Shown piece by piece: positions 1,992 through 62,930 of a stretch of 64,000 bases of DNA (position 1 is its first letter; every line of letters begins with the position of its first letter). The translations under genes were made by a program, and so were the position numbers. A model generated the notes under the pieces. The model was not told the origin of the DNA and did not search any database. It was given only the letters and a program-made list of their open reading frames with translations. The stretch comes from Octopus sinensis (taxonomy: Eukaryota), in contig NC_043026.1 of assembly GCF_006345805.1 (NCBI RefSeq), forward strand, positions 9,796,001-9,860,000, read 5' to 3'.

Positions 1992-3329
1992 TCAGAGATA
2001 TGGCTTCTCTCCTGTGTGAATACGTTTGTGAGAAGTTAGGTTACTAATTACAGAGAAGGATTTACCACAGATGTCACAATGATGTGGCTTTTCTCCTGAA
2101 TGAATACGTTTGTGAGAAGTTAAGTTATGACTTTGAGAGAATGATTTACCACAGATATCACAATGATATGGTTTCTCTCCTGTATGAATATGTTTGTGTT
2201 TTGTTAAATTATTACTTTGAGAGAATGATTTACCACAGATATCACAGTGATATGGCTTCTCTCCCGAATGAATACGCTTGTGTTTAGTATAGTCACTACT
2301 TATGCGGAATGATTTACCACAGATATCACAATGAAATGGCTTCTCACCAGTATGAATACGTTTGTGCCTATTTAGCGCACGGCGTTTGAAGAATGATTTA
2401 CCACAGATATCACAGAGATATCTCTTTTCCACTGTGTGAATACTTTTGTGTTCAGCTAAGTGACTGCTTAAAGAGAATGATTTACCACACAAATCACAGT
2501 GAAATGATTTCATTCTTGAATGAATAAGTTTGTGTTTAGTCAAGTTGTAACTTTGAGAGAAAGACTTACCACAGATATCACAGTGATACGGCTTCTCTCC
2601 TGAATGAATACGCTTGTGCTTAGTTACTTTATAACTTTCAGAGAATGATTTACCACAAATATCACAGTGAAATGGCTTTTCTCCTGAATGAATACGTTTG
2701 TGCTTCGTGAAGTCACCACTACCAGAGAATGACTTACCACAAATATCACAGTGGTATGGTTTCTCTCCTGAATGAATACGTTTGTGTGTAGTTAAGTGAC
2801 TATTTGCAGAGAAGGATTTACCACAGACGTCACAGTGAAATGGCTTCTCTCCTGTGTGAGTATGTTTGTGAGTAGTTAAGTTACTACTTACAGAGAATGA
2901 TTTACCACAGATATCACAGTGATACGGCTTCTCTCCTGTATGAATACGTTTATGAGAAGTCACGTGATAACTTCGAGAGAATGATTTACCACAGATATCA
3001 CAGTGATACGGCTTCTCACCTGTATGACTACGTTTGTGGGTCGTTAACACATTTTGAGAGAATGATTTACCACAGATATCACACTGATATGGCTTCTCCC
3101 CCGTATGAACACGTACATGCCTAGTTAATTTAATACTTCCAGTGAATGATGTACCACATATATAACAGCAATATGGCTTTTCCCTTGTATGAATACATTT
3201 ATGAGTATTTAGGTTACCTTCTTGTGGGAATGACTTTTTACAGGTATCACAGTCATATGACAATTTACTTTTCTCTTTTATCATGCCTGCAGGGAAAATC
3301 ACATCCTTAAGTTTCTCACTTTCTTCCAT
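1992..3329 (-). CDS. C2H2 zinc-finger protein (ZNF-1), 445 aa, 15 tandem fingers, no KRAB/SCAN/ZAD recognisable
   Basis: CxxC-x12-HxxxH repeats with (T/S)GEKP linkers; N-terminus [25 protein letters not shown] paralogous to ZNF-2 and ZNF-3. Confidence 0.95.
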
Positions 3330-6399: not shown

Positions 6400-7500
6400 C
6401 ATCATCATCTTCGTTTAGCATCCGCTTTCCATGCTAGCATGGGTTGGACGGTTCAACTGGGGTCTGGGAAGCCAGAAGGCTGCACCAGGCCCAGTCTGAT
6501 CTGGCAATGTTTCTACGGCTGGATGCCCTTCCTAATGCCAACCACACCGTGAGTGTAGTGGGTGCTTTTTACGTGCCACCGACACAGGTGCCAGGCGAGG
6601 CTGGCGAACGACCACGATTGGTTGGTGCTTTTTACGTGCCACCGGCACGGGAGCCAGGCAGGGCTGGCAAACGGCCACAATCGGATGGTGCTTTTTACGT
6701 GCCACCGGCATGGGGGCCAGGCAAGGCTGGCAAACGGCCACGATCGGATGGTGCTTTTTACGTGCCACCGGCATGGGGGCCAGGCAAGGCTGGCAAACGG
6801 CCACGATCGGTTGGTGCTTTTTACGTGCCATCGGCATGGGGGCCAGGCAAGGCTGGCAAACGGCCACAATCGGATGGTGCTTTTTACGTGCCACCGGCAT
6901 GGGGGCCAGGCAAGGCTGGCAAACGGCCACGATCGGTTGGTGCTTTTTACGTGCCACCGGCACGGGAGCCAGGCAAGGCTGGCAAACGGCCACGATCGGA
7001 TGGTGCTTTTTACGTGCCACCGGCACGGGGGCCAGGCAAGGCTGGCAAACAGCCACGATCGGTTGGTGCTTTTTACGTGCCATCGGCATGGGGGCCAGGC
7101 AAGACTGGCAAATGGCCACGATCGGATGGTGCTTTTTACGTGCCACCGGCATGGGGGCCAGGCAAGGCTGGCAAACAGCCACGATCGGTTGGTGCTTTTT
7201 ACGTGCCATCGGCACGGGGGCCAGGCAAGGCTGGCAAACGGCCACGATCGGTTGGTGCTTTTTACGTGCCATCGGCATGGGGGCCAGGCAAGACTGGCAA
7301 ACGACCACGATCGGATGGTGCTTTTTACGTGCCACCGTGACGGGGGCCAGGCGAGGCTGGCAAACGGCCACAATCGGATGGTGATTTTTACGTGCCACCG
7401 GCACGAGGCCAGTCGGGGCGGCGCTGGCAACATTCGGATGGTTCTCTTACGTACCACCGGCACTGGTATGACAGCTGCAATTTCCATTGATGTTGATCAA
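6400..7500 (-). mobile_element. Family C RTE-tailed retroposon with expanded internal VNTR
   Basis: 13-bp TSD aactcgtataatt at 6387-6399 and 7501-7513; (ATG)n tail. Confidence 0.85.
6559..7420. repeat. 63-bp minisatellite, about 14 units
   Basis: ggtgctttttacgtgcc recurs every 63 bp (6561, 6624, ...). Confidence 0.95.
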
Positions 7501-10472: not shown

Positions 10473-11723
10473 CTAATTTCCTTTCTCTTTTGTATGAATA
10501 CACTTGTGTGCAATTAATTTACTATTCTCAGTGAATGATTTAGCACAGATATCACAGTGATGTGGCTTCCTTGCATGAATACGCTTGTGGGAAGACAAGG
10601 AACTGGTGTTAGAGAATGATTTACCACAGACATCACAGTGATATGGTTTCTCTCCTGTATGAGTACGTTTGTGTTTAATTAAAGTATACCTTACAGTAAA
10701 CGATTTACTACAGACATCACAGTGATATGGCTTCTCTCCTGTATGAGTACGTTCGTGTATAGTTAAAGTACCACTTGTAGTGAATGATTTACCACATATA
10801 ACACAGTGATATGGTTTTTCTCCTGTGTGAATACGTCTGTGTTTAGTTAAGTGACTACTGTAAGAGAACAATTTATCACAGATATCACAGTGATATGGTT
10901 TCTCTCCTGTATGAATAAGTATGTGTTTAGTTAAAGTAGAACTTACAGTAAACGATTTACCACAGATATCACAGTGATATGGTTTCTCTCCTGTATGAGT
11001 ACGTTTATGTTTAATTAAAGTGGAACTTACAGTAAACAATTTACCACAGATATCACAGTGATAAGGTTTCTCTCCTGTATGAGTACGTTCGTGTGTAGTT
11101 AAAGTACCACTTTCAGTGAATGATTTACCACATATAACACAGTGAAATGGTTTCTCTCCTGTATGAATACGTTTGTGTGTAATTAATTTATTATTTTGAG
11201 AAAATGATTTACCGCAGATATCACAGTTATATGGTTTCTCCCCTGTATGAATACGTTTATGGGCAGTTAAATTACTACCGTCAGTGAACGATTTATCACA
11301 GATATCACAATGATATGGTTTCTCCCCTGTATGAATACGTTTATGGGCAGTTAAATTACTACCGTCAGTGAACGATTTATCACAGATATCACAGTGATAG
11401 GGTTTCTCCCCTGTATGAATACGTTTATGTGCAGTTAAATTACTACCGTCGGTGAATGATTTACCACAGATATCACAATGATATGGCTTTTCTCCTGTGT
11501 CAGTACGTTTCAGAGCAGTAAATTTACTACTTTTATAGAGTGATTTACTAGAGACATCAGAGTAATACAGATTCTCTTCTGAATGAATTTGTTTGTGTTT
11601 AGTTAGGTTTCTCTTTTGAGAGAAGGACTTTCTACAGACATCACAGTCATATGACAATTTTCTTTTCTCTTGTATTATGTCTTTAGGGGAAATCAATGCT
11701 TTACTTTTCTCATACTTCTCCAT
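10473..11723 (-). CDS. C2H2 zinc-finger protein (ZNF-2), 416 aa, 13 intact fingers plus 1 degenerate
   Basis: TGEKPY linkers; three consecutive near-identical fingers (TDGSNLTAH); shared N-terminal peptide. Confidence 0.95.
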   Translation of the reverse strand: MEKYEKSKALISPKDIIQEKRKLSYDCDVCRKSFSQKRNLTKHKQIHSEENLYYSDVSSKSLYKSSKFTALKRTDTGEKPYHCDICGKSFTDGSNLTAHKRIHTGEKPYHCDICDKSFTDGSNLTAHKRIHTGEKPYHCDICDKSFTDGSNLTAHKRIHTGEKPYNCDICGKSFSQNNKLITHKRIHTGEKPFHCVICGKSFTESGTLTTHERTHTGEKPYHCDICGKLFTVSSTLIKHKRTHTGEKPYHCDICGKSFTVSSTLTKHILIHTGEKPYHCDICDKLFSYSSHLTKHRRIHTGEKPYHCVICGKSFTTSGTLTIHERTHTGEKPYHCDVCSKSFTVRYTLIKHKRTHTGEKPYHCDVCGKSFSNTSSLSSHKRIHARKPHHCDICAKSFTENSKLIAHKCIHTKEKGN

Positions 11724-15282: not shown

Positions 15283-15810
15283 GTTCAAATTCCGCCGAGG
15301 TCGACTTTGCCTTTCATCCTTTCGGGGTCGATAAATTAAGTACCAGTTACGCACTGAGGTCGATGTAATCGACTTAATCCCTTTGTCTATCCTTGTTTGT
15401 CCCCTCTGGGTTTAGTCCCTTGTGGGTAGTAAAGAAATAGGTATTTCGTCTGTCTTTACGTTCTGAGTTCAAATTCCGCCGAGGTCGACTTTGCCTTTCA
15501 TCCTTTCGGGGTCGATAAATTAAGTACCAGTTACGCACTGAGGTCGATGTAATCGACTTAATCCCTTTGTCTATCCTTGTTTGTCCCCTCTGTGTTTAGT
15601 CCCTTGTGGGTAGTAAAGAAATAGGTATTTCGTCTGTCTTTACGTTCTGAGTTCAAATTCCGCCGAGGTCGACTTTGCCTTTCATCCTTTCGGGGTCGAT
15701 AAATTAAGTACCAGTTGCGTACTGGGTCGATATAATCGACTTAATCCATTTGTTTGTCCTTGTTTGTCCCCTCTGTGTTTATCCCCTTGTGGGTAGTAAA
15801 GAAATAAGTA
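15283..15810 (+). mobile_element. SINE family B, head-to-tail trimer
   Basis: Three units joined at gaaataggtatttcgtctg. Confidence 0.9.
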
Positions 15811-17150: not shown

Positions 17151-17170
17151 GGGATAGTTTAGGTGTATAT

Positions 17171-17311
17171 ACTCTTTTACTCTTTTACTTGTTTCAGTCA
17201 TTTGACTACGGCCATGCTGGAGCACCGCCTTTAATCGAGCAAATCGATCCCGGGACTTATTCTTTTGTAAGCCCAGTACTTATTCTATCGGTCTCTTTTG
17301 CCGAACCACTA
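17171..17311 (-). mobile_element. SINE family A 3' segment fused to the 7SL-derived sequence
   Basis: tagtggttcggcaaaagagacc...aaaagagtaaaagagt tail. Confidence 0.85.
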
Positions 17312-17546
17312 TATGGTTCAGTTCTATTTAGTATCTTTTGCCTGCTGCGTTTCCGCCCTGGGTCCTTAGACAACCTGGTCCTGATGAGCTCCCTCTCCAG
17401 CACCATATTGATGCCGAGCTTAGTGCGGACACCCGATTGCCATAGAAGACCAACTACCAGGACTCCCATCCTCAAACCGGCCAACCAACCAACCAAACAA
17501 CCAAGCCTCCGAGTAGCTGGATTACAGGAGCACGTCACAACTCCGT
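17306..17546 (-). ncRNA. 7SL: 7SL (SRP) RNA-derived sequence, probably a pseudogene (3'-truncated)
   Basis: Minus strand: ...cctgtaatccagctactcggaggct (Alu domain), atcgggtgtccgcactaagctcggcatcaatatggtg, helix-6 GGAG loop, accaggttgtctaagg, helix-8 cccagggcgGAAAcgcagcagg; (TTGG)n insertion and apparent loss of the ggggtgaaccgg segment. Confidence 0.9.
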
Positions 17547-17594
17547 TATTTATTCTTCTTCTTCTTTATATGATGGACTCTCCTGTCGTTAGAT

Positions 17595-18350
<756 letters not shown>

Positions 18351-18359
18351 TGCGCCTGA

Positions 18360-20943: not shown

Positions 20944-23900
20944 TTATGTATCATAATGAAAGAAAGCAAAAGATTGACGCCCTGGAATAATTCCAAAGAC
21001 CACAAAAGAATCACCTGAAATATCAAAACCAATTACTTTGTATACTTCATTATCATCACAGGTGAGGAGTAAATATTGTTCGATATCTTCAGACGTTTGT
21101 TGTTCCGTATGTCCGGGAATTTGGTAAATATTGTTATATTTATCTGTTATATAAACATGGTCACCGTGTGTGGTTAGATAAGGCCTGTACATATAATAAT
21201 ATAGATCTGTTGGTAGTTTTATACTCCTGACCAAGTGTTCCCTGTACCAACAGACAACATAGTAACCATCCTTCCTCCACCTTTCCTTCTCTATCTTCAT
21301 AACAACAATATCACGATCAGATGTCACTATTATATCCAGCATCTCTATCTCCTCTACCTCCACCCTCTCTCTGACCCCAGAACATACTTCACGATTGTAT
21401 TTACCTGTCCAATAATCGACATCAACAACGTCTACATAGTAGTTATACATCTTACGTTTCGTTCTGTCTTTAATATAATGACCACCACATACGAGTTGCT
21501 TGTCATTATTTCTATAAATCCTATTGTAGTATTTTACTGTACTGATGGTTCCCAAATGAGAGAGATCTCTGTTGAAGAACATTAACTGCTCACCAAAGGA
21601 GAGTATGAAGCAGTCATTTGTCCACCGACATATATCTTGTGGCTGTTGCCTTAACTGTTTATGTTGCAGTATGTCCCCTGTTCTAGTTGTGATTACTGTG
21701 ACAGTGTCTCTAAACACCAACACACTAACATTGCCATCTAACTTAATTAGTTTACTGTTATTGTCTCTCTTATAATCATAATTAACTGGTTCGTCCAATG
21801 TTGGAATTGAAATGGGAACCATTGCTGTCCTATATGGAAGTCTCCTCACTGATATTTCATCAATTCCTGACATACTTTCCGCTACGTAATTACCACATCT
21901 CACCTTTAATCTACCTTTACAAACTATTTCACCTGATTTACCTCTTCTTCCTTCTCCTCCGCTGTCTTTCAGTCTATCAATTAATTCGTTACTGAATATT
22001 TCATTGTTTCTCTGAGATGTAAAGGAAGGGAACTGAAGACCAGAATCAAACTTTAATAACGATATAGATTCTAGAATGCTCACTTGGTCCCCATCAATCT
22101 TTATGCAATGACATTCAATCAATTCATTATGCACACACCAGTAAATGTTTCCCACTTTCCTCCATATCATGCTGTAAGGCACTCCACTTTGCCAGACTTT
22201 ACGCTCCATCAAATCTTGTTGTTTCAACTGAAATATTTCTCGTCTGTTAGGGACTGTGACCATAATATCTCTTTCTCCCGAAAAACACACACCACCCACT
22301 AAAGTTCCAAGGTCTCTGTGACATAGCAGCTCCCCATGGCTATCAAATATTTTAACGTTGCCATTATTCGCTTTTTCACACACAACTGCCTCTCCACCAT
22401 CAGAGATATCAATATCTTTAACTTCAACAGGATACTCGTCTGTTTGTAACCGACAAACAGGAAAGCTTTCCCGATTATTGTTAAACAAGCCTTCAACATA
22501 CAATTTATTACTATGGCTTCCAACAAACCTTGGTCCTTTACAGTTTATGCTAGTGATATCAACTTCATCTATATAAATTCTGTTATTTAAAAATATACTG
22601 TTGTATTCACCATTCTGTGTCAAACACAGAATCTTATTATACCCCATATAGAAACCACCATATCTATCCCACCAGCCATAAATGTACAAATAACTGTCAT
22701 CAATTGTCATATTGTTGTAATCTTTAATGTACTCCATGTAGTGTCTAACCGAATGTAAACAGTGACCATTACGGTTGAAGAAAATGATGAATTTATCGTT
22801 GTAAACAATGATGATATCATTGGCAGTAACTGCAATATCACCGATGTCAAAAATATAATTACAGTCACCATGTCTGTCTCTTGTTAATAATGTTTCAATT
22901 ATGTCAATTTGTTTTACTTCCTTCACGGTTGAATGCCTTTCATCAATATCAACAACATACAGAGTACGTCCGTCTCTCCATCTGCTACACACCAGTAGAT
23001 TGTCCGACAAAGGAGCTATACATTTATATTCATTTATCGTCTGGTATGTTATCAATGACAATGGAAATTCCACTTTCAGTGTCAGCAGTTTGAGATTATC
23101 GTAAGTCGTAATAACCAGTGTGTTCGATTGCCATCGGGACATATTGACATAGTAGCCATTCAATTCGACAGAGTCCAGAAGTTGGCCATCAAATGTTAAT
23201 ATCTTAATGTTTTTATTGTTCCTGTCATATCCTGCAATCAGGTTATTTTCAGTAATAACCAAACGATCAATGCCTACTGGTTGTTCGTCTTCAAAATCTG
23301 GAAGGACAACGAGATCCCGCTGAGCTTTATCAGAAACTGTTAGATCTTGTAGATATATTCTAGAAGACAACATCTCAGCAACACAGATATTTCTAGAGAG
23401 TACATCTACAAGGTCGATGTACATGTTAAGTTGATTATTTGTAACGTGATCTCTGACCACCAAGTTATTGTCATTTATAGCAAACATACGGCTGCTGTCT
23501 ACCAGATAAACGAACATTTCATCACTACATCCACCACAAAGATTGAGTAGAGGTTTGGTGTTGGACAGTAAAACAGCAGGCACCATCTTGCTGCTGCTGC
23601 TGCTACTACTACTACTCCAACTATTACGTCGACAGCTATCAGCAACACCATCACTACCACTACAACCATGACCACCATCACCACCTATTCCAGTGTTGTA
23701 CAGAAATACTTTTTTCCTAGTGACAATTAGTAGCATTAGTGTTTCGTTTTCTATCGTTAAAGATTTTACTACAGAATGGATACCAACCCTATAAATTATT
23801 TCAGTTTGATTATAATTTTTAATGGCTAAAATATCTAAATGAGATGGTTTATCACAATAACAGACAATTTGGTCTTCACCCAACTTACACACCCGTACAT

Positions 23901-24090
23901 AAGGCTGTCTTAATAGTACAGTTCTAACTGTCTTTGAGAGATTTCCGATGACCCTTAATTGTTTCTGTAGGGGTAATGTGACCCCTATTCCAAAACAATC
24001 CCATCGACATATATCTGTAGCTGTAGACGGCAGAGGCAATGTGGACACAATGTCCCCTTCATTAGAAATGTACAACAAGCAATCATGCTT
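20944..24090 (-). CDS. C-terminal part (1048 aa) of a large multi-beta-propeller (NHL/TolB-like) protein
   Basis: 3.1-kb open frame in AT-rich DNA; blade motifs TDICRW..GVTLP, NIKILTFDGQLL, VKIFDSHGELL..VTVP, QPQDICRW; the frame is open upstream of the tracked start as KHDCLLYISNEG. Confidence 0.8.
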   Translation of the reverse strand, partial: KHDCLLYISNEGDIVSTLPLPSTATDICRWDCFGIGVTLPLQKQLRVIGNLSKTVRTVLLRQPYVRVCKLGEDQIVCYCDKPSHLDILAIKNYNQTEIIYRVGIHSVVKSLTIENETLMLLIVTRKKVFLYNTGIGGDGGHGCSGSDGVADSCRRNSWSSSSSSSSSKMVPAVLLSNTKPLLNLCGGCSDEMFVYLVDSSRMFAINDNNLVVRDHVTNNQLNMYIDLVDVLSRNICVAEMLSSRIYLQDLTVSDKAQRDLVVLPDFEDEQPVGIDRLVITENNLIAGYDRNNKNIKILTFDGQLLDSVELNGYYVNMSRWQSNTLVITTYDNLKLLTLKVEFPLSLITYQTINEYKCIAPLSDNLLVCSRWRDGRTLYVVDIDERHSTVKEVKQIDIIETLLTRDRHGDCNYIFDIGDIAVTANDIIIVYNDKFIIFFNRNGHCLHSVRHYMEYIKDYNNMTIDDSYLYIYGWWDRYGGFYMGYNKILCLTQNGEYNSIFLNNRIYIDEVDITSINCKGPRFVGSHSNKLYVEGLFNNNRESFPVCRLQTDEYPVEVKDIDISDGGEAVVCEKANNGNVKIFDSHGELLCHRDLGTLVGGVCFSGERDIMVTVPNRREIFQLKQQDLMERKVWQSGVPYSMIWRKVGNIYWCVHNELIECHCIKIDGDQVSILESISLLKFDSGLQFPSFTSQRNNEIFSNELIDRLKDSGGEGRRGKSGEIVCKGRLKVRCGNYVAESMSGIDEISVRRLPYRTAMVPISIPTLDEPVNYDYKRDNNSKLIKLDGNVSVLVFRDTVTVITTRTGDILQHKQLRQQPQDICRWTNDCFILSFGEQLMFFNRDLSHLGTISTVKYYNRIYRNNDKQLVCGGHYIKDRTKRKMYNYYVDVVDVDYWTGKYNREVCSGVRERVEVEEIEMLDIIVTSDRDIVVMKIEKERWRKDGYYVVCWYREHLVRSIKLPTDLYYYMYRPYLTTHGDHVYITDKYNNIYQIPGHTEQQTSEDIEQYLLLTCDDNEVYKVIGFDISGDSFVVFGIIPGRQSFAFFHYDT

Positions 24091-26279
24091 GTGTCGGACA
24101 CCACTAACTGTCCATTTGGCAGATTACATATTTTACCAATGAGGATTTTGTCATATTCATTTCCTTTTAGTCGTATATTTACATTTCTGATATAAGGATT
24201 CTTGATGGGTAAACAACAGCCAGACCAGTCATGATACCTGTAAAGAAGAACCCTGTGGAATTCAATGTCCAACACATAAATAGTTCCTTGGAAAACAGCA
24301 ATGTGAGAGTGAACAGTCAAAGGTAGTTTCCACTGCCATTTAATGTCTCCATATATATTGTAACATTTCACAACAGACTCTCTCTTGAACAGAACATAAT
24401 AATATACATTATCAGAGTAGATGTGATGAAGACAGCCATAGAACTGAAGGTATTTTTCAAAAAGTGCTTCACCTGATGTGGAATAAAATACCAGTTTATG
24501 TTTCTTTACGTCTACAATTACGAAATTAATTGGAGTTGCAGCAATGGTAACAGCATCATGTTCCAGTGAAATTCTGATTTTGATGTCAACCCTGTCCTCC
24601 TTAATCAACTGAATATGTACCTCTGTTTTGTTTTCATCAGTAATCAGAGCTAAATACTTATTTGACACAATATGACATATTTTAATGTAATCAGTGTGAA
24701 CCTGTATTAAAGGACCCTTGTTTAGTTCAGGACATGTGATATACTGAAGTCTTTTGATTTCACGATAAAAGACCAGAAATCTGTCTGAGTTCATTCTACA
24801 AAAGACTGAAGGAAAGAAGGGGAAATTTAAATAATTTGGGCCAATTTTTCCCCCCGTATCAGTGAATAATATAGCTTTGTTATTCCTGTAGGTAATTAAT
24901 ATAGAAGATGTTGACATAGGTAGAATATTTGTAATATTGCAGGGATCTTCAATATAAATATGGTTGTTTAACTTGGGGGTGTGCAACTGGCGGCTGTATG
25001 ACAGTTTGGGCCAAAAGTCTTTATTTGTTTTAACCACACGAAGAATACCAAAATAATCTGTTAAGAAAATGGCACCTGTGCCAACAGAAATATTCCTACA
25101 TTTCGTGCCTATTTCCCTCTGTGAAACACCACCTGTACCTGAAATCTTATAAATTATATGTCCCTGGAGGACATAAAAATGGTTTTGGTACACAGTGACA
25201 TTGGTTGGGAGATCCAGAGAATGAGTGTAGACCTCAAATATCTGCTGGCCATCCAAATTATAGCATACAACTCTATTAATATTAGCAAATGATATTAATA
25301 GTTGATACTGTACCCCTACAGTAATATCTGCAGGTATCTCTTTGACATCAAATTTATTTGTAATTACATTATCATCCCAATCAACAAGGTATATGGTCTT
25401 CATAAACATTTCCACACCTATGAACGTAGAATGTTGTAAATATGACACCATCATAAAACCTAATTGAAGAGTTTTAATTTTAAAACTCGAGGGATTGATA
25501 ATAAGAATAATTTTTCTAAAGGGTAGGGTGGCCAGAACAGTGTCTTCACTAATTCTGGTTAAATCAGTGACAGAAGATGGGCAACGAACATCATTTCTGC
25601 CACCATCTCTTGTTACATAACATATTGTCATATAATGGCGGGAATATGTTACAATTCCCCCTTGTATGATAATAATATTGGATGTTATGTTGCTTAAGTC
25701 TTCACCAGATTCGTCGATCTTTGCTTCTCTGCTTACAACCGGAGAAAGAGGTCGAAATTTGTTGATTATTTTTGGTGCCTCAGTGGTCTTGTATTTGTCT
25801 TGTAAAACATTTGTATTTATGTAGTGTTCAAGAAACAATTCGAGTTTTCCAAAATTAACAAAATCTTGACTGTAATCGTATTTGTTAATGTCTTTTAACA
25901 AAATATTTGTTCTTTGTGCAAAACACCGAATAAAGACATTTTCGTCCAATCCTACACTTTTTAAAAAGTTACATATCTTTTCCCGAGAATTTATCAACAT
26001 ATTCATTTTGTCTTCATATGCGTTGAATCTTGTATAATATATGTTTGTGTCCAAAACATCTCGTCTTTCAATTATTTCCCGCTTTTTAGGGTCTTCTTTG
26101 TGTCTTTTTTGTCTTTTTGTTGATTGACATGAAGGTCGTTTTTTTGGCATTTCTGTTCTCGAACATTCACCTGCATCATACCTACACTTTTTATTGTAGA
26201 CTCCATCGCTTTTTGTTGTTGTTACAGCTCTTTTCCGAGGTGTAAGTTTACTTGAAACATTTCTTGTATGATCTTCCAT
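23985..26279 (-). CDS. N-terminal part of the same protein: basic NLS-rich head, helical segment, two propeller modules; natural junction at about aa 730 (VSDT)
   Basis: 764-codon ORF; RVVCYNLDGQ, KLVFYSTSGE, VKCYNIYGDI, LPNGQLVVSD blade motifs; candidate acceptor ttcattatAG (26288-26287) 7 nt before the ATG. Confidence 0.8.
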   Translation of the reverse strand: MEDHTRNVSSKLTPRKRAVTTTKSDGVYNKKCRYDAGECSRTEMPKKRPSCQSTKRQKRHKEDPKKREIIERRDVLDTNIYYTRFNAYEDKMNMLINSREKICNFLKSVGLDENVFIRCFAQRTNILLKDINKYDYSQDFVNFGKLELFLEHYINTNVLQDKYKTTEAPKIINKFRPLSPVVSREAKIDESGEDLSNITSNIIIIQGGIVTYSRHYMTICYVTRDGGRNDVRCPSSVTDLTRISEDTVLATLPFRKIILIINPSSFKIKTLQLGFMMVSYLQHSTFIGVEMFMKTIYLVDWDDNVITNKFDVKEIPADITVGVQYQLLISFANINRVVCYNLDGQQIFEVYTHSLDLPTNVTVYQNHFYVLQGHIIYKISGTGGVSQREIGTKCRNISVGTGAIFLTDYFGILRVVKTNKDFWPKLSYSRQLHTPKLNNHIYIEDPCNITNILPMSTSSILITYRNNKAILFTDTGGKIGPNYLNFPFFPSVFCRMNSDRFLVFYREIKRLQYITCPELNKGPLIQVHTDYIKICHIVSNKYLALITDENKTEVHIQLIKEDRVDIKIRISLEHDAVTIAATPINFVIVDVKKHKLVFYSTSGEALFEKYLQFYGCLHHIYSDNVYYYVLFKRESVVKCYNIYGDIKWQWKLPLTVHSHIAVFQGTIYVLDIEFHRVLLYRYHDWSGCCLPIKNPYIRNVNIRLKGNEYDKILIGKICNLPNGQLVVSDTSMIACCTFLMKGTLCPHCLCRLQLQIYVDGIVLE

Positions 26280-34586: not shown

Positions 34587-34635
<49 letters not shown>

Positions 34636-35169
34636 TTTTATTTGTTTCAGTCATTCGACTGTGTCCATGCTGGGGCACCTTGGGCAAGTGTCTTCTGCTA
34701 TACGACATTTCTCGTAAAACGGGGGCAGATGACCCAATTTTTTAATGGGGTGAAATAACTAAAAAGTACCAACCCTTAATCCAAAGAGTGGGAAACAGGG
34801 TGTAATTAAACTGAAACAAAAGTTTTTAAGTGTATGGGTTTTTTTTGTCACGAATGTAGAATACTAAACCAAAGGAAACATATATTGTTATAGAAATCTA
34901 ATAGACTTCAACTGGGTGTGTCAAAATGTTAATTTCTGCGCCAGTGAACAATAGCAAAGCAAAGAAAATATATATTTGTAAAGAAATGTAATAGACTTCA
35001 TGCATCAATGAATAATATAAAAGCAAAGAAGATACTTTTGTGTAGAAGGGTTAGAGTGTTCAACAAGATGTAAGAAAACTGGATAAGTACAAATAATAGC
35101 TCACACACTCACGCACTCACTCACACCCCCACCCAGACACCTACTCATCGTTACACATATACATACTCT

Positions 35170-49018: not shown

Positions 49019-50515
49019 ATGGAAAAGAGTGAGAAAATTATAGACCTGACTTCCCCTGAACACATGATAAAAGAGAGGAGATCGTATGACTGTGATATCT
49101 GTACAAAGTCCTTCCTTCGCAAAAGTGGCCTAATTGTGCACAAACGTATTCATGCAGGGGAGAAATCATATCATTGTGATATCTGTGGTAAATCGTTCTC
49201 TAGTAGTAATTTAACTGCACACAAACGTACCCATACAGAAAAGAAACTACATCATTGTGATATTTGTAGTAAATCATTCTCTAACAGTAGTCACTTAACT
49301 GCACATAAACGTGTTCATACAGGAGAGAAGCCATATCATTGTGATATTTGTGGTAAATCATTCTCTATAAGTAGTCATGTTACTGCTCACAAACGTACTC
49401 ATACAGGGGAGAAACCATATCACTGTGATGTCTGTGGTAAATCATTCTCTGGAAACACTGCCCTAACAAAACACAATCGTATTCATACAGGAGAGAGACC
49501 ATTTCACTGTGATGTCTGTGATAAATCATTCTCTCAAAGTATTCACTTAACTACACATAAACGTATTCACACAGGGGAGAAACCGTATCATTGTGATATT
49601 TGTGGTAAATCATTCATTGCAAATAATTACTTAACTAGGCACCAACGTATTCACACAGGAGAGAAACCATATGACTGTGATATCTGTGGTAAATCATTCT
49701 CTTATAGTTCTGGCTTAACTAAACACAAAAGTATTCATACAGGGGAGAAGCTATATCACTGTGATGTCTGTGGTAGATCATTCTCTCAAAGATCTCACTT
49801 AACTAGACACAAACATATTCACACGGGAGAGAAGCCATATCATTGTGATATCTGTGGAAAATCATTCACTGAAAATAGTTACTTAGTTATACACAAACGT
49901 GTTCATACTGGAGAGAGACCATATCACTGTGATATCTGTGGTAAATCTTTCTCTGAAAATTCTGCCTTAACTAATCACAAACGTATTCATACGGGAGAAG
50001 AACCTTATCATTGTGATATCTGTGGGAAATCATTCTCTCGAAGTAGTAACATAGCTAGACACAAACGTATTCATACAGGAGACAGGCCATATGAATGTGA
50101 TTACTGTGGTAGATCATTCAATGAAAATCGTGATTTAACTAGACACAAACATATTCATTCGAGAGAGAACTCATATAACTGTGATGTCTGTGGTAAATCA
50201 TTCTGTAACCGTAATGCCTTGACTTCACACAAGCGTGCTCATGCAAAGGAAATGCCATATCCCTGTGATATCTGTAGTAAATCATTTTTTGAAAGGGGTC
50301 ACTTAATTGCACACAAGCGTGTTCATACAGGAGAGAAGCCAAATTGTGATATCTGTGGTAAATCATTGACTCATAATTATCAGTTAAGTAGACACAGACG
50401 TATTCATACAGGAGAGAAACCATATCACTGTGATGTCTGTGGTAAATCATTCTCTCAAAATAGTGACTTAATGAAACACAAATATATTCATACAGAAGAG
50501 AAAGGAGAAGGATAG
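49019..50515 (+). CDS. C2H2 zinc-finger protein (ZNF-3), 498 aa, 17 fingers
   Basis: Tandem C2H2 fingers with TGEKP linkers; shared N-terminal peptide. Confidence 0.95.
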
Positions 50516-51639: not shown

Positions 51640-52187
51640 GGCGGTGAGCTGGCAGAAACGTTAGCACGTCGGGCGAAATGCGTAGCCGTATTTCGTCTGT
51701 CGTTACGTTCTGAGTTCGAATTCCGCCGAGGTCGACTTTGCCTTTCATCCTTTCGGGGTCGATAAATTAAGTACCAGTTACACACTGGGGTCGATATAAT
51801 CGACTTAATCCGTTTGTATGTCCTTGTTTGTCCCTTCTGTGTTTAGCCCCTTGTGGGTAGTAAAGAAATAGGTATTGTAGAGATTGTTATTGTGTTTTCC
51901 CCTTGTGGGTAGTAAAGAAAAAGGTTACTCCTGATTTGTTATTAAATATTAATATAATTTGTTTTGAAGGCGGTGAGCTGGCAGAAACGTTAGCACGTCG
52001 GGCGAAATGCGTAGCCGTATTTCGTCTGTCGTTACGTTCCGAGTTCAAATCCCGCCGAGGTCGACTTTGCCTTTCATCTTCTCGGGGTCGATAAATTAAG
52101 TACCAGTTACGCACTGGGGTCGATATAATCGACTTAAAATCCCTTTGTCTGTCCTTGTTTAGCCCCTCGTGGGTAGTAAAGAAATAA
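51640..52187 (+). mobile_element. Two SINE family B copies (tandem duplication including 5' flank)
   Basis: About 18-bp direct repeat aatataatttgttttgaa flanks the second copy (TSD-like). Confidence 0.85.
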
Positions 52188-62195: not shown

Positions 62196-62346
62196 GAGGT
62201 CGACTTTGCCTTTCATCCTTTCGGGGTCAATAAATTAAGTACCAGTTACGCACTGGAGTCGATGTAATCGACTTAATTCCCTTGTCTGTCCTTGTTTGTC
62301 CCCTCTATGTTTAGCCCCTTGTGGGCAATAAAGAAACACATATATG

Positions 62347-62384
<38 letters not shown>

Positions 62385-62930
62385 GACAATGGATATACGC
62401 TATGCATTTTTATGTAGGTGGCGAGCTGGCAGAACCGTTAGAACGCCGGGTGAAATGCGTAGCCGTATTTCGTCTGCCGTTACGTTCTGAGTTCAAGTTC
62501 CGCCGAGGTCGACTTTGCCTTTCATCCTTTCGGGGTCGATAAATTAAGTACCAGTTACGCACTGGGGTCGATGTAATCGACTTAATTCCCTTGTCTGTCC
62601 TTGTTTGTCCCCTCTATGTTTAGCCCCTTGTGGGTAATAAAGAAACACATATATATACATGTATATATATATATATATATACACAGACAATGGATATACG
62701 CTATGCATTTTTATGTAGGCTGCGAGCTATGTAGGCGGCGAGCTGGCAGAACCGTTAGAACCATTGCGTTCTGAGTTCAAGTTCCGCCGAGGTCGACTTT
62801 GCCTTTCATCCTTTCGGGGTCAATAAATTAAGTACCAGTTATGCACTGGGGTCGATGGAATCAACTTAATCACTTTGTCTGTCCTTGTTTGTCCTCTCTG
62901 TGTTTAGCCCCTTGTGGGTAGTAAAGAAAT
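62195..62930 (+). mobile_element. Three SINE family B copies in a ~300-bp tandem triplication
   Basis: Each unit is followed by (TA)n-acacagacaatggatatacgctatgc. Confidence 0.85.

What the first reader, a model, noticed from the sequence alone, without database searches (positions are those of the whole stretch)
17171..17546. 7SL (SRP) RNA fused to a SINE 3' tail: a candidate Alu-like chimera in a mollusc
Seen: about 240 nt of 7SL on the minus strand (Alu-domain 5' part, helix-6 GGAG loop, helix-8 GCG-GAAA-CGC with a compensatory change relative to the human sequence as I recall it). It runs directly into the last ~140 nt of SINE family A, including its (AAAAGAGT)n tail, joined at a TAGTGG microhomology (17311-17306) found in both parents. 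Established: Alu/B1 arose from 7SL, 7SL-derived SINEs are rare outside Euarchontoglires, and RT template switching yields chimeras such as U6-L1. Inference: a 7SL head plus a LINE-recognised tail is the blueprint of a new SINE. Alternative: a decayed genomic 7SL gene hit by a truncated SINE; a TATAAA lies about 20-25 nt upstream and I see no TSD.
Basis: partly seen in the sequence, partly recalled or inferred. Interest (0 to 1): 0.7.

Follow-up and report, generated by a model that had tools for sequence, protein, structure and literature searches.

The report
Dead 7SL–SINE fusion in octopus
An octopus genome window holds one decayed copy of the first two thirds of the signal-recognition-particle RNA (7SL) joined to the tail end of a common octopus SINE. 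It looks like a one-off by-product of retrotransposition, not a demonstrated new Alu-like element.

Summary
On the minus strand, 17545-17334 is 7SL RNA from about nt 5 to 217 (Rfam Metazoa_SRP 67.8 bits, E 1e-16, just under the cut-off of 70). 17311-17169 is the last 143 nt of the tRNA-type SINE 'family A' with its authentic (AAAAGAGT)n-TAT end, 96.5% identical to consensus. The window is Octopus sinensis.

Three refinements:
- The two parts do not abut. 22 nt (17333-17312) match neither parent.
- The 7SL part stops exactly at GGCAAAAGA, a 9-mer that SINE A also carries internally and that resembles its tail unit.
- SINE A breaks repeatedly at the same TTAGCGG position in other loci.

The 7SL part cannot work as SRP RNA:
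- it has a 12-nt deletion in helix 8;
- it has a 12-nt (TTGG)n expansion;
- it lacks the 3' 80 nt;
- it has no T-run terminator.

I found no second copy in 217 kb of octopus DNA, but I could not search whole genomes.

My preferred reading is a single-copy chimeric retrocopy made when the reverse transcriptase switched from SINE RNA to 7SL RNA (0.45). The main rival is an older 7SL copy truncated by a SINE insertion or deletion (0.35). A real 7SL-headed SINE family is unlikely (about 0.07). Interest is modest.

The parts
17593..18357 (-). Full-length SINE family A copy in the same orientation, ending 47 nt upstream of the 7SL part. It has a tRNA-like head, a strongly expanded (TA)n/(TG)n core and an (AAAAGAGT)n-TAT tail. 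It is context, not demonstrably part of the chimera.
   Evidence: head 97.7%, tail 97.1% to consensus
17546..17592 (-). A-rich unique spacer between the upstream SINE tail and the 7SL part. It contains TATAAA at 17570-17565.
   Evidence: no other copy in 217 kb. Chance of TATAAA in a 15-nt span is about 1%. No detectable homology to the flank of the O. bimaculoides 7SL locus P0001.
17334..17545 (-). 7SL (SRP RNA)-derived segment, about nt 5-217 of a roughly 299-nt RNA: the Alu-domain 5' part, helix 5 5' strand, helix 6 and the helix 8 tetraloop. The first 4 canonical nt are not recognisable (UAAC instead of GCUG).
17481..17503 (-). (TTGG/TTTGG)n tract holding a 12-nt expansion relative to the octopus 7SL copies P0001 and P0002 (extra TKQP codons in the antisense reading).
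17377..17404 (-). Helix 6 hairpin with its GGAG loop (17392-17389). Its antisense translation is identical to that of O. bimaculoides P0001.
17362..17363 (-). Site of a 12-nt deletion in the 5' strand of helix 8 (GGGACGAACCGG in real genes; PERP/PNRP codons in P0001/P0002). This region forms the SRP54-binding internal loops.
17346..17356 (-). Helix 8 tip, GCG-GAAA-CGC, matching the Rfam consensus.
17334..17342 (-). GGCAAAAGA, the last bases of the 7SL homology. The same 9-mer occurs inside SINE A at 17302-17294 and resembles the tail unit AAAAGAGT. It is the likely annealing site for the switch.
   Evidence: direct repeat 11/12, spacing 40
17312..17333 (-). 22 nt of unassigned junction sequence (TACTAAATAGAACTGAACCATA). 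Its GAACCA (17319-17314) forms a 6-bp inverted repeat with the first SINE bases TGGTTC (17308-17303).
   Evidence: (no significant match to 7SL, to SINE A on either strand, or within 2 kb)
17169..17311 (-). 3' module of SINE family A, 5'-truncated at the recurrent TTAGCGG break point, with the authentic tail TAAAAGAGTAAAAGAGTAT (17187-17169).
   Evidence: 96.5% identity; structured, z = -2.7; same break point in L006 and L008

Best explanation
This is a single-copy, non-functional chimeric retrocopy in Octopus sinensis.

Inferred sequence of events:
1. A LINE reverse transcriptase was copying a SINE family A RNA from its (AAAAGAGU)n tail.
2. It reached the position where this SINE recurrently breaks (TTAGCGG).
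3. After a short messy stretch (22 nt of filler with a snap-back inverted repeat) it continued on 7SL RNA.
4. It entered 7SL at the internal GGCAAAAGA motif, which mimics the SINE's own internal and tail motif, and copied 7SL almost to its 5' end.

What is shown: the two parents, their extents, the motif at the 7SL end, the recurrent SINE break point, and the damage to the 7SL part.

What is inferred: that a single reverse-transcription event made the fusion.

The product lacks the 3' third of 7SL and has since acquired, or was made with, a 12-nt deletion in helix 8 and a 12-nt microsatellite expansion. It is neither an SRP RNA gene nor, on present evidence, a propagating SINE.
For: - Parents and order. 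7SL nt about 5-217 is followed by a 5'-truncated SINE A with its authentic 3' terminus, in the same orientation.
- The 7SL copy starts within 4 nt of the RNA's 5' end, as expected when a cDNA runs to the end of its template.
- 7SL homology stops exactly at GGCAAAAGA. SINE A also carries this 9-mer, and it resembles the tail unit. A random break would fall there about 1-3% of the time.
- This SINE family shows switching or slippage at the same motifs elsewhere. L008:9402-9046 holds three tandem 3' modules joined tail-AAAAGAG|ACCGATAG. 5'-truncated modules starting at the same TTAGCGG occur in L006:7891 (fused to another SINE's tail) and L008:9402.
- Similar apparent age of both halves. The SINE part is 3.5% from consensus. 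The 7SL part has only about 3 codon changes of 66 that are private relative to two octopus 7SL copies.
- Adjacency by chance is unlikely. SINE A occurs about once per 7.5 kb and only about 10% of copies are truncated.
- 7SL/LINE chimeras at a few loci are documented in mammals (bioRxiv 10.1101/2025.02.02.635956). Template switching is the proposed origin of the hagfish 7SL SINE (PMC7245038).
Against: - No target-site duplication flanks the chimera. However, only 2 of 10 full SINE A copies show a clear one.
- 22 nt at the junction are unexplained.
- The switch would be onto an internal site of 7SL, not onto its 3' end as in the classic U6/L1 chimeras.
- TATAAA lies 19 nt upstream of the first 7SL-like base, with about 1-2% chance expectation. 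That would fit a promoter-bearing genomic 7SL copy.
- The two 12-nt indels in the 7SL part have no counterpart in the SINE part.
- No orthologous empty site or bona fide O. sinensis 7SL gene could be retrieved.
Confidence: 0.45

Rival explanations
1. Two-step origin. A genomic 7SL gene copy or older 7SL pseudogene already lay here. A 5'-truncated SINE A insertion with target-site deletion, or a later deletion repaired by end joining with filler, removed 7SL nt 218-299 and whatever followed.
For: - TATAAA lies at a promoter-like distance.
- No TSD.
- 22 nt of filler plus direct and inverted repeats at the junction are typical of end-joining repair.
- The two 12-nt indels are confined to the 7SL part.
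- Truncated or rearranged SINE A insertions exist elsewhere, for example 34700-34631.
- At least two 7SL loci exist in O. bimaculoides, so 7SL copies are not rare.
Against: - The first 4 nt of canonical 7SL are not conserved although the next 210 are. That is odd for a DNA-level gene copy.
- The upstream flank shows no homology to the one octopus 7SL flank available.
- The 7SL break coincides with the GGCAAAAGA motif, which a random deletion would hit rarely.
- The 7SL part is no more diverged than the SINE part.
- No remnant of the 7SL 3' end lies downstream of the tail.
Confidence: 0.35
2. It is one member, or the founder, of an amplified 7SL-headed SINE family in octopus that is mobilised through the SINE A/LINE tail.
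For: - Head-plus-tail architecture.
- The regions equivalent to the 7SL internal promoter (nt 6-15 and 76-86) are present (positions from PMC7245038).
- A TATA-like element lies upstream.
- There is a precedent in the hagfish SINE1-1_EBu (PMC7245038).
Against: - It is the only copy in 64 kb, and none occurs in 153 kb more of O. sinensis, O. vulgaris and O. bimaculoides DNA. SINE A has 29 copies in the same 217 kb.
- No ORF crossing the junction exists in two protein libraries. This evidence is weak.
- It lacks the 3' Alu-domain strand and keeps the S domain.
- The 7SL part alone folds no better than shuffles.
- No TSD.
Confidence: 0.07
3. Two independent neighbouring insertions: a partial 7SL retrocopy primed internally at AAAAGA, and a truncated SINE A module. 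The 22 nt between them would be original genomic DNA.
For: - There is a weak TSD-like match for the 7SL part alone: AAGAATAAATAAC upstream against AAGATACTAAATAGAAC downstream. I saw this by eye.
- Stand-alone truncated modules exist (L008:9402).
Against: - The chance that a SINE A 5' end lies within 25 nt downstream in the same orientation is about 0.2% or less (density).
- The TSD-like match needs two indels and is A/T-rich.
- The inverted repeat spans the filler/SINE boundary.
Confidence: 0.08

Closest known systems
Chimeric retrocopies of small RNAs with LINE/SINE 3' ends (U6/L1 type; 7SL/L1 at a few mammalian loci)
   Same: The 5' partner is a small Pol III RNA copied to about its 5' end. 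The 3' partner is a 5'-truncated retroelement with its own tail. Both lie in the same orientation, and each locus is a single copy.
   Different: - The host is a cephalopod.
- The donor is a SINE with an (AAAAGAGT)n tail, not poly(A) L1.
- Only 7SL nt 5-217 is present, so entry was internal at a tail-like motif.
- There are 22 nt of filler.
- No TSD was found.
SINE1-1_EBu of hagfish (Kojima 2020, PMC7245038)
   Same: A 7SL-derived head is joined to the body and tail of an older tRNA-type SINE served by a non-L1 LINE. The proposed origin is chimera formation or template switching.
   Different: SINE1-1_EBu is a multi-copy family with a uniform structure. It keeps both the 5' and 3' Alu-domain parts and has lost the S domain. 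The octopus locus is single, keeps helices 6 and 8, and lacks the 3' Alu-domain strand.
Alu / B1 (SINE1 of Euarchontoglires)
   Same: It has a 7SL-derived 5' region including the UGUAAU and helix 3/4 part.
   Different: - Alu and B1 retain 7SL 1-63, 76-83 and 267-299 and use poly(A) with L1.
- Here nt 218-299 are absent.
- The S domain is present.
- The tail is a specific LINE-type repeat.
- No amplification is seen.
P7SL_MD / P7SL_Cpo (full-length 7SL retrocopies of marsupials and guinea pig)
   Same: They are 7SL sequences with the S domain retained, and their status as SINE or retrocopy is uncertain.
   Different: Those are full-length 7SL plus poly(A) in thousands of copies. This one is 3'-truncated, fused to a SINE module, and a single copy so far.
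5'-truncated LINE/SINE insertions with target-site deletion and junction filler
   Same: It shows a truncated element, no TSD, extra bases at the 5' junction and short direct and inverted repeats at the junction.
   Different: That model needs a pre-existing 7SL copy, which is not shown here. It also does not explain why 7SL ends at the tail-like GGCAAAAGA.

Membership tests
Functional metazoan SRP (7SL) RNA gene | Reaches the Rfam Metazoa_SRP gathering score with a full-length alignment | tested here: not met
   67.8 bits against a cut-off of 70. Model positions after about 217 are force-aligned to filler and SINE with many non-canonical pairs. Real genes score 267-274 bits.
Functional metazoan SRP (7SL) RNA gene | Intact helix 8 internal loops and the 3' strand of helix 5 / Alu domain | tested here: not met
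   There is a 12-nt deletion at 17363|17362, and nt 218-299 are absent. The 7SL part alone folds at z = +0.39.
Functional metazoan SRP (7SL) RNA gene | Pol III T-run terminator after the 3' end | tested here: not met
   There is no TTTT on the minus strand anywhere in 17700-17100. L001 and L002 end in T-runs.
Functional metazoan SRP (7SL) RNA gene | Upstream promoter shared with other 7SL genes of the species | tested here: inconclusive
   TATAAA lies at 17570-17565. There is no homology to the back-translated flank of O. bimaculoides P0001. No O. sinensis 7SL gene DNA was obtainable.
SINE1 (7SL-derived SINE family) | Many dispersed copies with the same chimeric structure and different flanks | tested here: not met
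   There is one copy in 217 kb sampled, and none crossing the junction in the protein libraries. Power is low: only a family above roughly 50,000 copies would be excluded. A whole-genome search was not possible.
SINE1 (7SL-derived SINE family) | Head keeps both halves of the Alu domain and lacks the S domain (PMC7245038) | tested here: not met
   The 5' half and the S-domain helices 6 and 8 are present. The 3' half is absent.
SINE1 (7SL-derived SINE family) | Tail shared with a partner LINE or an active SINE | tested here: met
   143 nt are 96.5% identical to the SINE A 3' module, with an authentic ...AAAAGAGTAT terminus as in 5 or more other copies.
SINE1 (7SL-derived SINE family) | Transcribed by Pol III and retrotransposition-competent | not testable with these tools
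   No expression data are available. The sequences equivalent to the 7SL A-box and B-box regions are present (17543-17534; 17467-17457).
Template-switch chimeric retrocopy | 5' partner begins at the 5' end of its RNA; 3' partner is a 5'-truncated retroelement ending in its tail; same orientation | tested here: met
   7SL homology starts at nt 5 (G17544). The SINE module runs from the TTAGCGG position to the tail. Both lie on the minus strand.
Template-switch chimeric retrocopy | One TSD flanking the whole chimera | tested here: not met
   The best flank match is only the tail itself. The feature is weakly diagnostic here, because 8 of 10 ordinary SINE A copies also lack a clear TSD.
Template-switch chimeric retrocopy | Clean or microhomology junction between the two templates | tested here: inconclusive
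   22 nt are unassigned. There is a GGCAAAAGA direct repeat and a 6-bp inverted repeat at the junction.
Template-switch chimeric retrocopy | Absent as a unit from the orthologous site of a related species | not testable with these tools
   Only paralogous loci (77-79% identity) of O. vulgaris could be fetched.

The most novel reading that the evidence does not exclude
The locus is a member or the progenitor of a 7SL-headed SINE in octopods. That would be the first SINE1-type element in an invertebrate. It would have arisen because octopus 7SL RNA carries an internal GGCAAAAGA motif that mimics the tail and internal motif recognised or used by the SINE A/LINE reverse transcriptase.
Probability: 0.07. 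Interest if true: 0.75.

Novelty: new member of a known kind. Interest (0 to 1): 0.3.

Why it matters
If it is a one-step product, this locus is a caught-in-the-act example, outside vertebrates, of the first step proposed for the birth of 7SL-derived SINEs: a LINE or SINE reverse transcriptase hopping onto 7SL RNA.

It also suggests a concrete reason for the hop. A 9-nt motif in 7SL is identical to one inside the SINE and resembles its tail repeat.

As a single decayed copy it has no evident function. It mainly adds a data point on how stringent-type LINE machinery captures cellular RNAs in cephalopods. If the junction proved to be multi-copy, it would be a third independent origin of SINE1 and the first in an invertebrate.

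Tried and rejected
- The Rfam gathering scan of the window found nothing. The hit appears only with the E-value threshold.
- I searched the protein collection with the two ORFs that cross the junction, hoping for spurious ORFs from other copies. An exhaustive phmmer search followed. These returned only real 7SL genes and plain SINE A copies, with none crossing the junction. The negative is weak because octopus non-coding DNA is barely represented and clusters collapse at 50% identity.
- DNA for the two octopus 7SL ORFs P0001 and P0002 was not on record. I used degenerate back-translation instead.
- The junction pattern in metagenome contigs gave 0 hits. A SINE A control pattern also gave 0 hits, so that collection holds no octopus DNA and the negative means nothing.
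- An exact look-up of the 277-aa ORF spanning the chimera, and of other window ORFs, found nothing on record.
- I sought the O. vulgaris orthologous locus through neighbouring genes. Only paralogues at 77-79% identity were reachable.
- I tried to assign the 22-24 nt junction filler to the 7SL 3' part, to SINE A on either strand, to a related SINE family, or to sequence within 2 kb. All shuffle tests gave p > 0.25.
- I considered and dropped the idea that the filler is a decayed 7SL helix-5 3' strand. The rest of the 7SL part is too well conserved for that.
- A TSD search for the chimera, the upstream SINE and the composite found nothing.
- A relative-age test of the two halves was inconclusive. 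Both are only a few percent from their references.
- ARAGORN finds no tRNA in the window. Rfam gives only low-complexity noise on a full SINE A copy, so the tRNA origin of the SINE head rests on my reading of its A-box-like and B-box-like motifs.

Full report
**Source of the window**

A 764-aa ORF of the window (23985-26279, minus) is listed as the window's own protein. It sits on a 15,106,159-bp contig that also carries annotated Octopus sinensis proteins. That contig is CM016888.1 of GCA_006345805.1. The window therefore comes from O. sinensis, in a region with C2H2 zinc-finger genes.

**The 7SL part**

- The default Rfam scan finds nothing. At the E-value threshold, Metazoa_SRP matches 17545-17255 (minus) with 67.8 bits and E 1.2e-16, just under the gathering score of 70.
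- I obtained comparators by searching the protein collection with the spurious ORFs that cross the region. The antisense ORF hit conceptual proteins that are antisense translations of 7SL genes.
  - P0001 is O. bimaculoides A0A0L8IFK9.
  - P0002 is a UniParc entry of unnamed source. I think it is also from an octopus, because of its G-rich low-complexity tail.
- Two further hits gave DNA, L001 and L002, which are invertebrates of unknown identity. They carry full 7SL genes scoring 267 and 274 bits.
- Aligned to these, the window is near-identical from G17544 (7SL nt 5) to GGCAAAAGA at 17342-17334 (about nt 217). Conservation then collapses.
- Within that stretch the UGUAAU motif, the helix-6 GGAG hairpin (17404-17377) and the helix-8 GCG-GAAA-CGC tip (17356-17346) are all present.
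- Relative to both octopus copies, the window has a 12-nt deletion in the helix-8 5' strand (at 17363|17362). It also has a 12-nt expansion of a TTGG-type tract (within 17503-17481).
- Otherwise at least 9 nucleotide differences in 198 aligned sites separate it from P0001. Only about 3 codons of 66 differ from both octopus copies.
- The first four canonical bases (GCUG) read UAAC. P0002 is canonical there and P0001 is not.
- There is no T-run on this strand between 17700 and 17100.
- The 7SL part alone folds no better than shuffles, z = +0.39.
- This sequence cannot be a working SRP RNA gene.

**The SINE part**

- BLAST of the region against the window finds ten further copies of the 3' portion. 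Every alignment starts at 17311.
- The family is about 400-470 nt long. It has a tRNA-like head, a (TA)n/(TG)n core and a 3' module that ends in (AAAAGAGT)n-TAT.
- 17311-17169 is 96.5% identical to the consensus of that module, within the 96-99% range of ordinary copies.
- The module is structured, z = -2.7.
- A full-length copy (18357-17593) lies 47 nt upstream of the 7SL part in the same orientation.

**The junction**

- The two parts do not abut. 17333-17312 (TACTAAATAGAACTGAACCATA) shows no significant similarity to any of the following:
  - the 3' third of real 7SL;
  - SINE A on either strand;
  - a related SINE family;
  - anything within 2 kb.
- TAGTGG (17311-17306) is simply the first SINE hexamer. 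The consensus is TAGCGG, and one other copy has TAGTGG.
- Real 7SL does contain UAGUGG about 15 nt beyond GGCAAAAG.
- The 7SL part ends exactly with GGCAAAAGA. That 9-mer recurs 40 nt downstream inside the SINE module (11 of 12 with the next three bases) and resembles the tail unit.
- A 6-bp inverted repeat, GAACCA/TGGTTC, bridges the filler/SINE boundary.

**Behaviour of this SINE family elsewhere**

I fetched 153 kb more octopus DNA around paralogues of a window gene, from O. vulgaris, O. sinensis and O. bimaculoides. Together with the window this makes 217 kb, holding 29 SINE A 3' modules at 88% identity or more.

- Three modules begin at the same TTAGCGG position:
  - the window copy;
  - L006:7891, which is fused directly to the tail of a full copy;
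  - L008:9402.
- L008:9402-9046 is an array of three modules joined tail-AAAAGAG|ACCGATAG, that is, at the internal GGCAAAAGAG motif.
- Breaks at TTAGCGG and joins at AAAAGAG are therefore recurrent in this family. That fits reverse-transcriptase stalling and template switching, or slippage, at these positions.

**Is it a family?**

- No second 7SL-like sequence occurs in the window or in the other 153 kb (blastn, word size 7; Rfam gathering scan on 116 kb).
- No protein-library entry crosses the junction.
- The metagenome collection holds no octopus DNA at all, as a control pattern showed.
- These negatives exclude only a very abundant family, above roughly 50,000 copies. That figure assumes a genome of about 2.7 Gb, which I recall and did not check.
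- A genome-wide search remains the decisive test, and I could not run it.

**Mechanism**

- Chance adjacency of two independent insertions is unlikely, given one SINE A per about 7.5 kb and about 10% truncated copies.
- Two linked models remain.
- In the one-step model, the reverse transcriptase copied the SINE RNA to its usual break point and moved to 7SL RNA at the tail-like GGCAAAAGA. This explains:
  - the orientation;
  - the authentic SINE terminus;
  - the near-complete 7SL 5' end;
  - the position of the 7SL break;
  - the similar apparent age of both halves.
- The one-step model does not explain the 22-nt filler, the missing TSD or the upstream TATAAA.
- In the two-step model, a 7SL gene copy or pseudogene lost its 3' end to a truncated SINE insertion with target-site deletion, or to a later deletion repaired by end joining. 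This explains the filler, the junction repeats, the missing TSD and possibly the TATAAA, which has about 1-2% chance expectation.
- The two-step model does not explain the non-conserved first 4 nt, the unrelated upstream flank or the break at GGCAAAAGA.
- TSDs are clear in only 2 of 10 ordinary SINE A copies, so their absence carries little weight.
- I put the one-step chimera at 0.45, the two-step origin at 0.35, independent insertions at 0.08 and a real family at 0.07.

**Comparison with what is known**

- Single-locus chimeras of small RNAs, including a few with 7SL, joined to LINE-1 3' ends are documented in mammals (bioRxiv 10.1101/2025.02.02.635956).
- 'Well-defined' 7SL SINEs are known from Euarchontoglires and, independently, from hagfish. 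There SINE1-1_EBu is thought to have arisen by chimera formation between 7SL and a tRNA-type SINE (PMC7245038).
- All of those families keep both halves of the Alu domain and have lost the S domain. The octopus locus shows the opposite pattern.
- It is therefore best filed as a new example, from a cephalopod and with a non-poly(A) tail, of a known kind of chimeric pseudogene. It is not a member of SINE1.

**Verdict**

- The proto-SINE reading is possible but unsupported.
- Interest is modest (0.3).
- The locus becomes more interesting only if the junction turns out to be multi-copy, or if the GGCAAAAGA entry point recurs in other octopus 7SL retrocopies.

Noticed in passing
window 34631-34700 (minus strand): This is another rearranged SINE A. 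An inverted piece of the SINE head (AGAAGACACTTGCCCAAGGTGCC, the reverse complement of the head) is fused to the last roughly 45 nt of the 3' module and tail. The layout resembles 'twin priming' inversions of L1.
   Followed up: partly
L008:9046-9402 and L006:7755-8090 (minus strands): There are tandem arrays of SINE A 3' modules. L008 holds three units joined tail-AAAAGAG|ACCGATAG. L006 holds a full SINE A followed directly by a module that starts at TTAGCAG. Three modules in 217 kb start at this same 5' break point.
   Followed up: partly
L004:5620-5720: A related SINE family (about 72-75% identical to family A) carries a 37-nt internal duplication that starts at the same TAGTGGTTC position. 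Families A and B also differ by a roughly 45-nt indel that ends at that position.
   Followed up: no
window 17850-18190: The (TA)n/(TG)n core of the full-length SINE A copy upstream of the chimera is expanded to about 340 nt. Other copies have about 25-70 nt. It yields spurious miRNA-like Rfam hits.
   Followed up: no
window 6561-7412: This is a 63-bp minisatellite with 13.5 copies at 92% match. It is open in several frames on both strands, which creates five overlapping ORFs of 224-324 aa that are almost certainly not genes.
   Followed up: partly
window 20944-26279 (minus strand): Two long overlapping ORFs (1044 and 764 aa) have no Pfam domain. They belong to an octopus-restricted multi-copy family. 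Paralogues at 51-66% protein identity occur in O. sinensis, O. vulgaris and O. bimaculoides, many on the same chromosome.
   Followed up: partly
window 1992-3329, 10473-11723, 49019-50515: Three intronless-looking C2H2 zinc-finger ORFs (445, 416 and 498 aa) fit the known expansion of this family in octopus.
   Followed up: partly
window, e.g. 15401-15601, 30436, 51832-52164, 56701, 62300-62893 (minus) and 5654, 31178, 45215 (plus): A second abundant repeat contains ...GACAAACAAGGACAGACAAAGGGATTAAGTCGATTACATCGACCCCAGTGCGTAACTGGTACTTAATTTATCGACCCCGAAAGGATGAAA..., with at least 14 copies in 64 kb. It is unrelated to SINE family A.
   Followed up: no
proteins P0038, P0039, P0040: These library 'proteins' are made of 3-4 tandem antisense translations of 7SL genes with a period of about 120 aa. 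They show that some organisms, of unknown identity, carry tandem arrays of 7SL genes.
   Followed up: no
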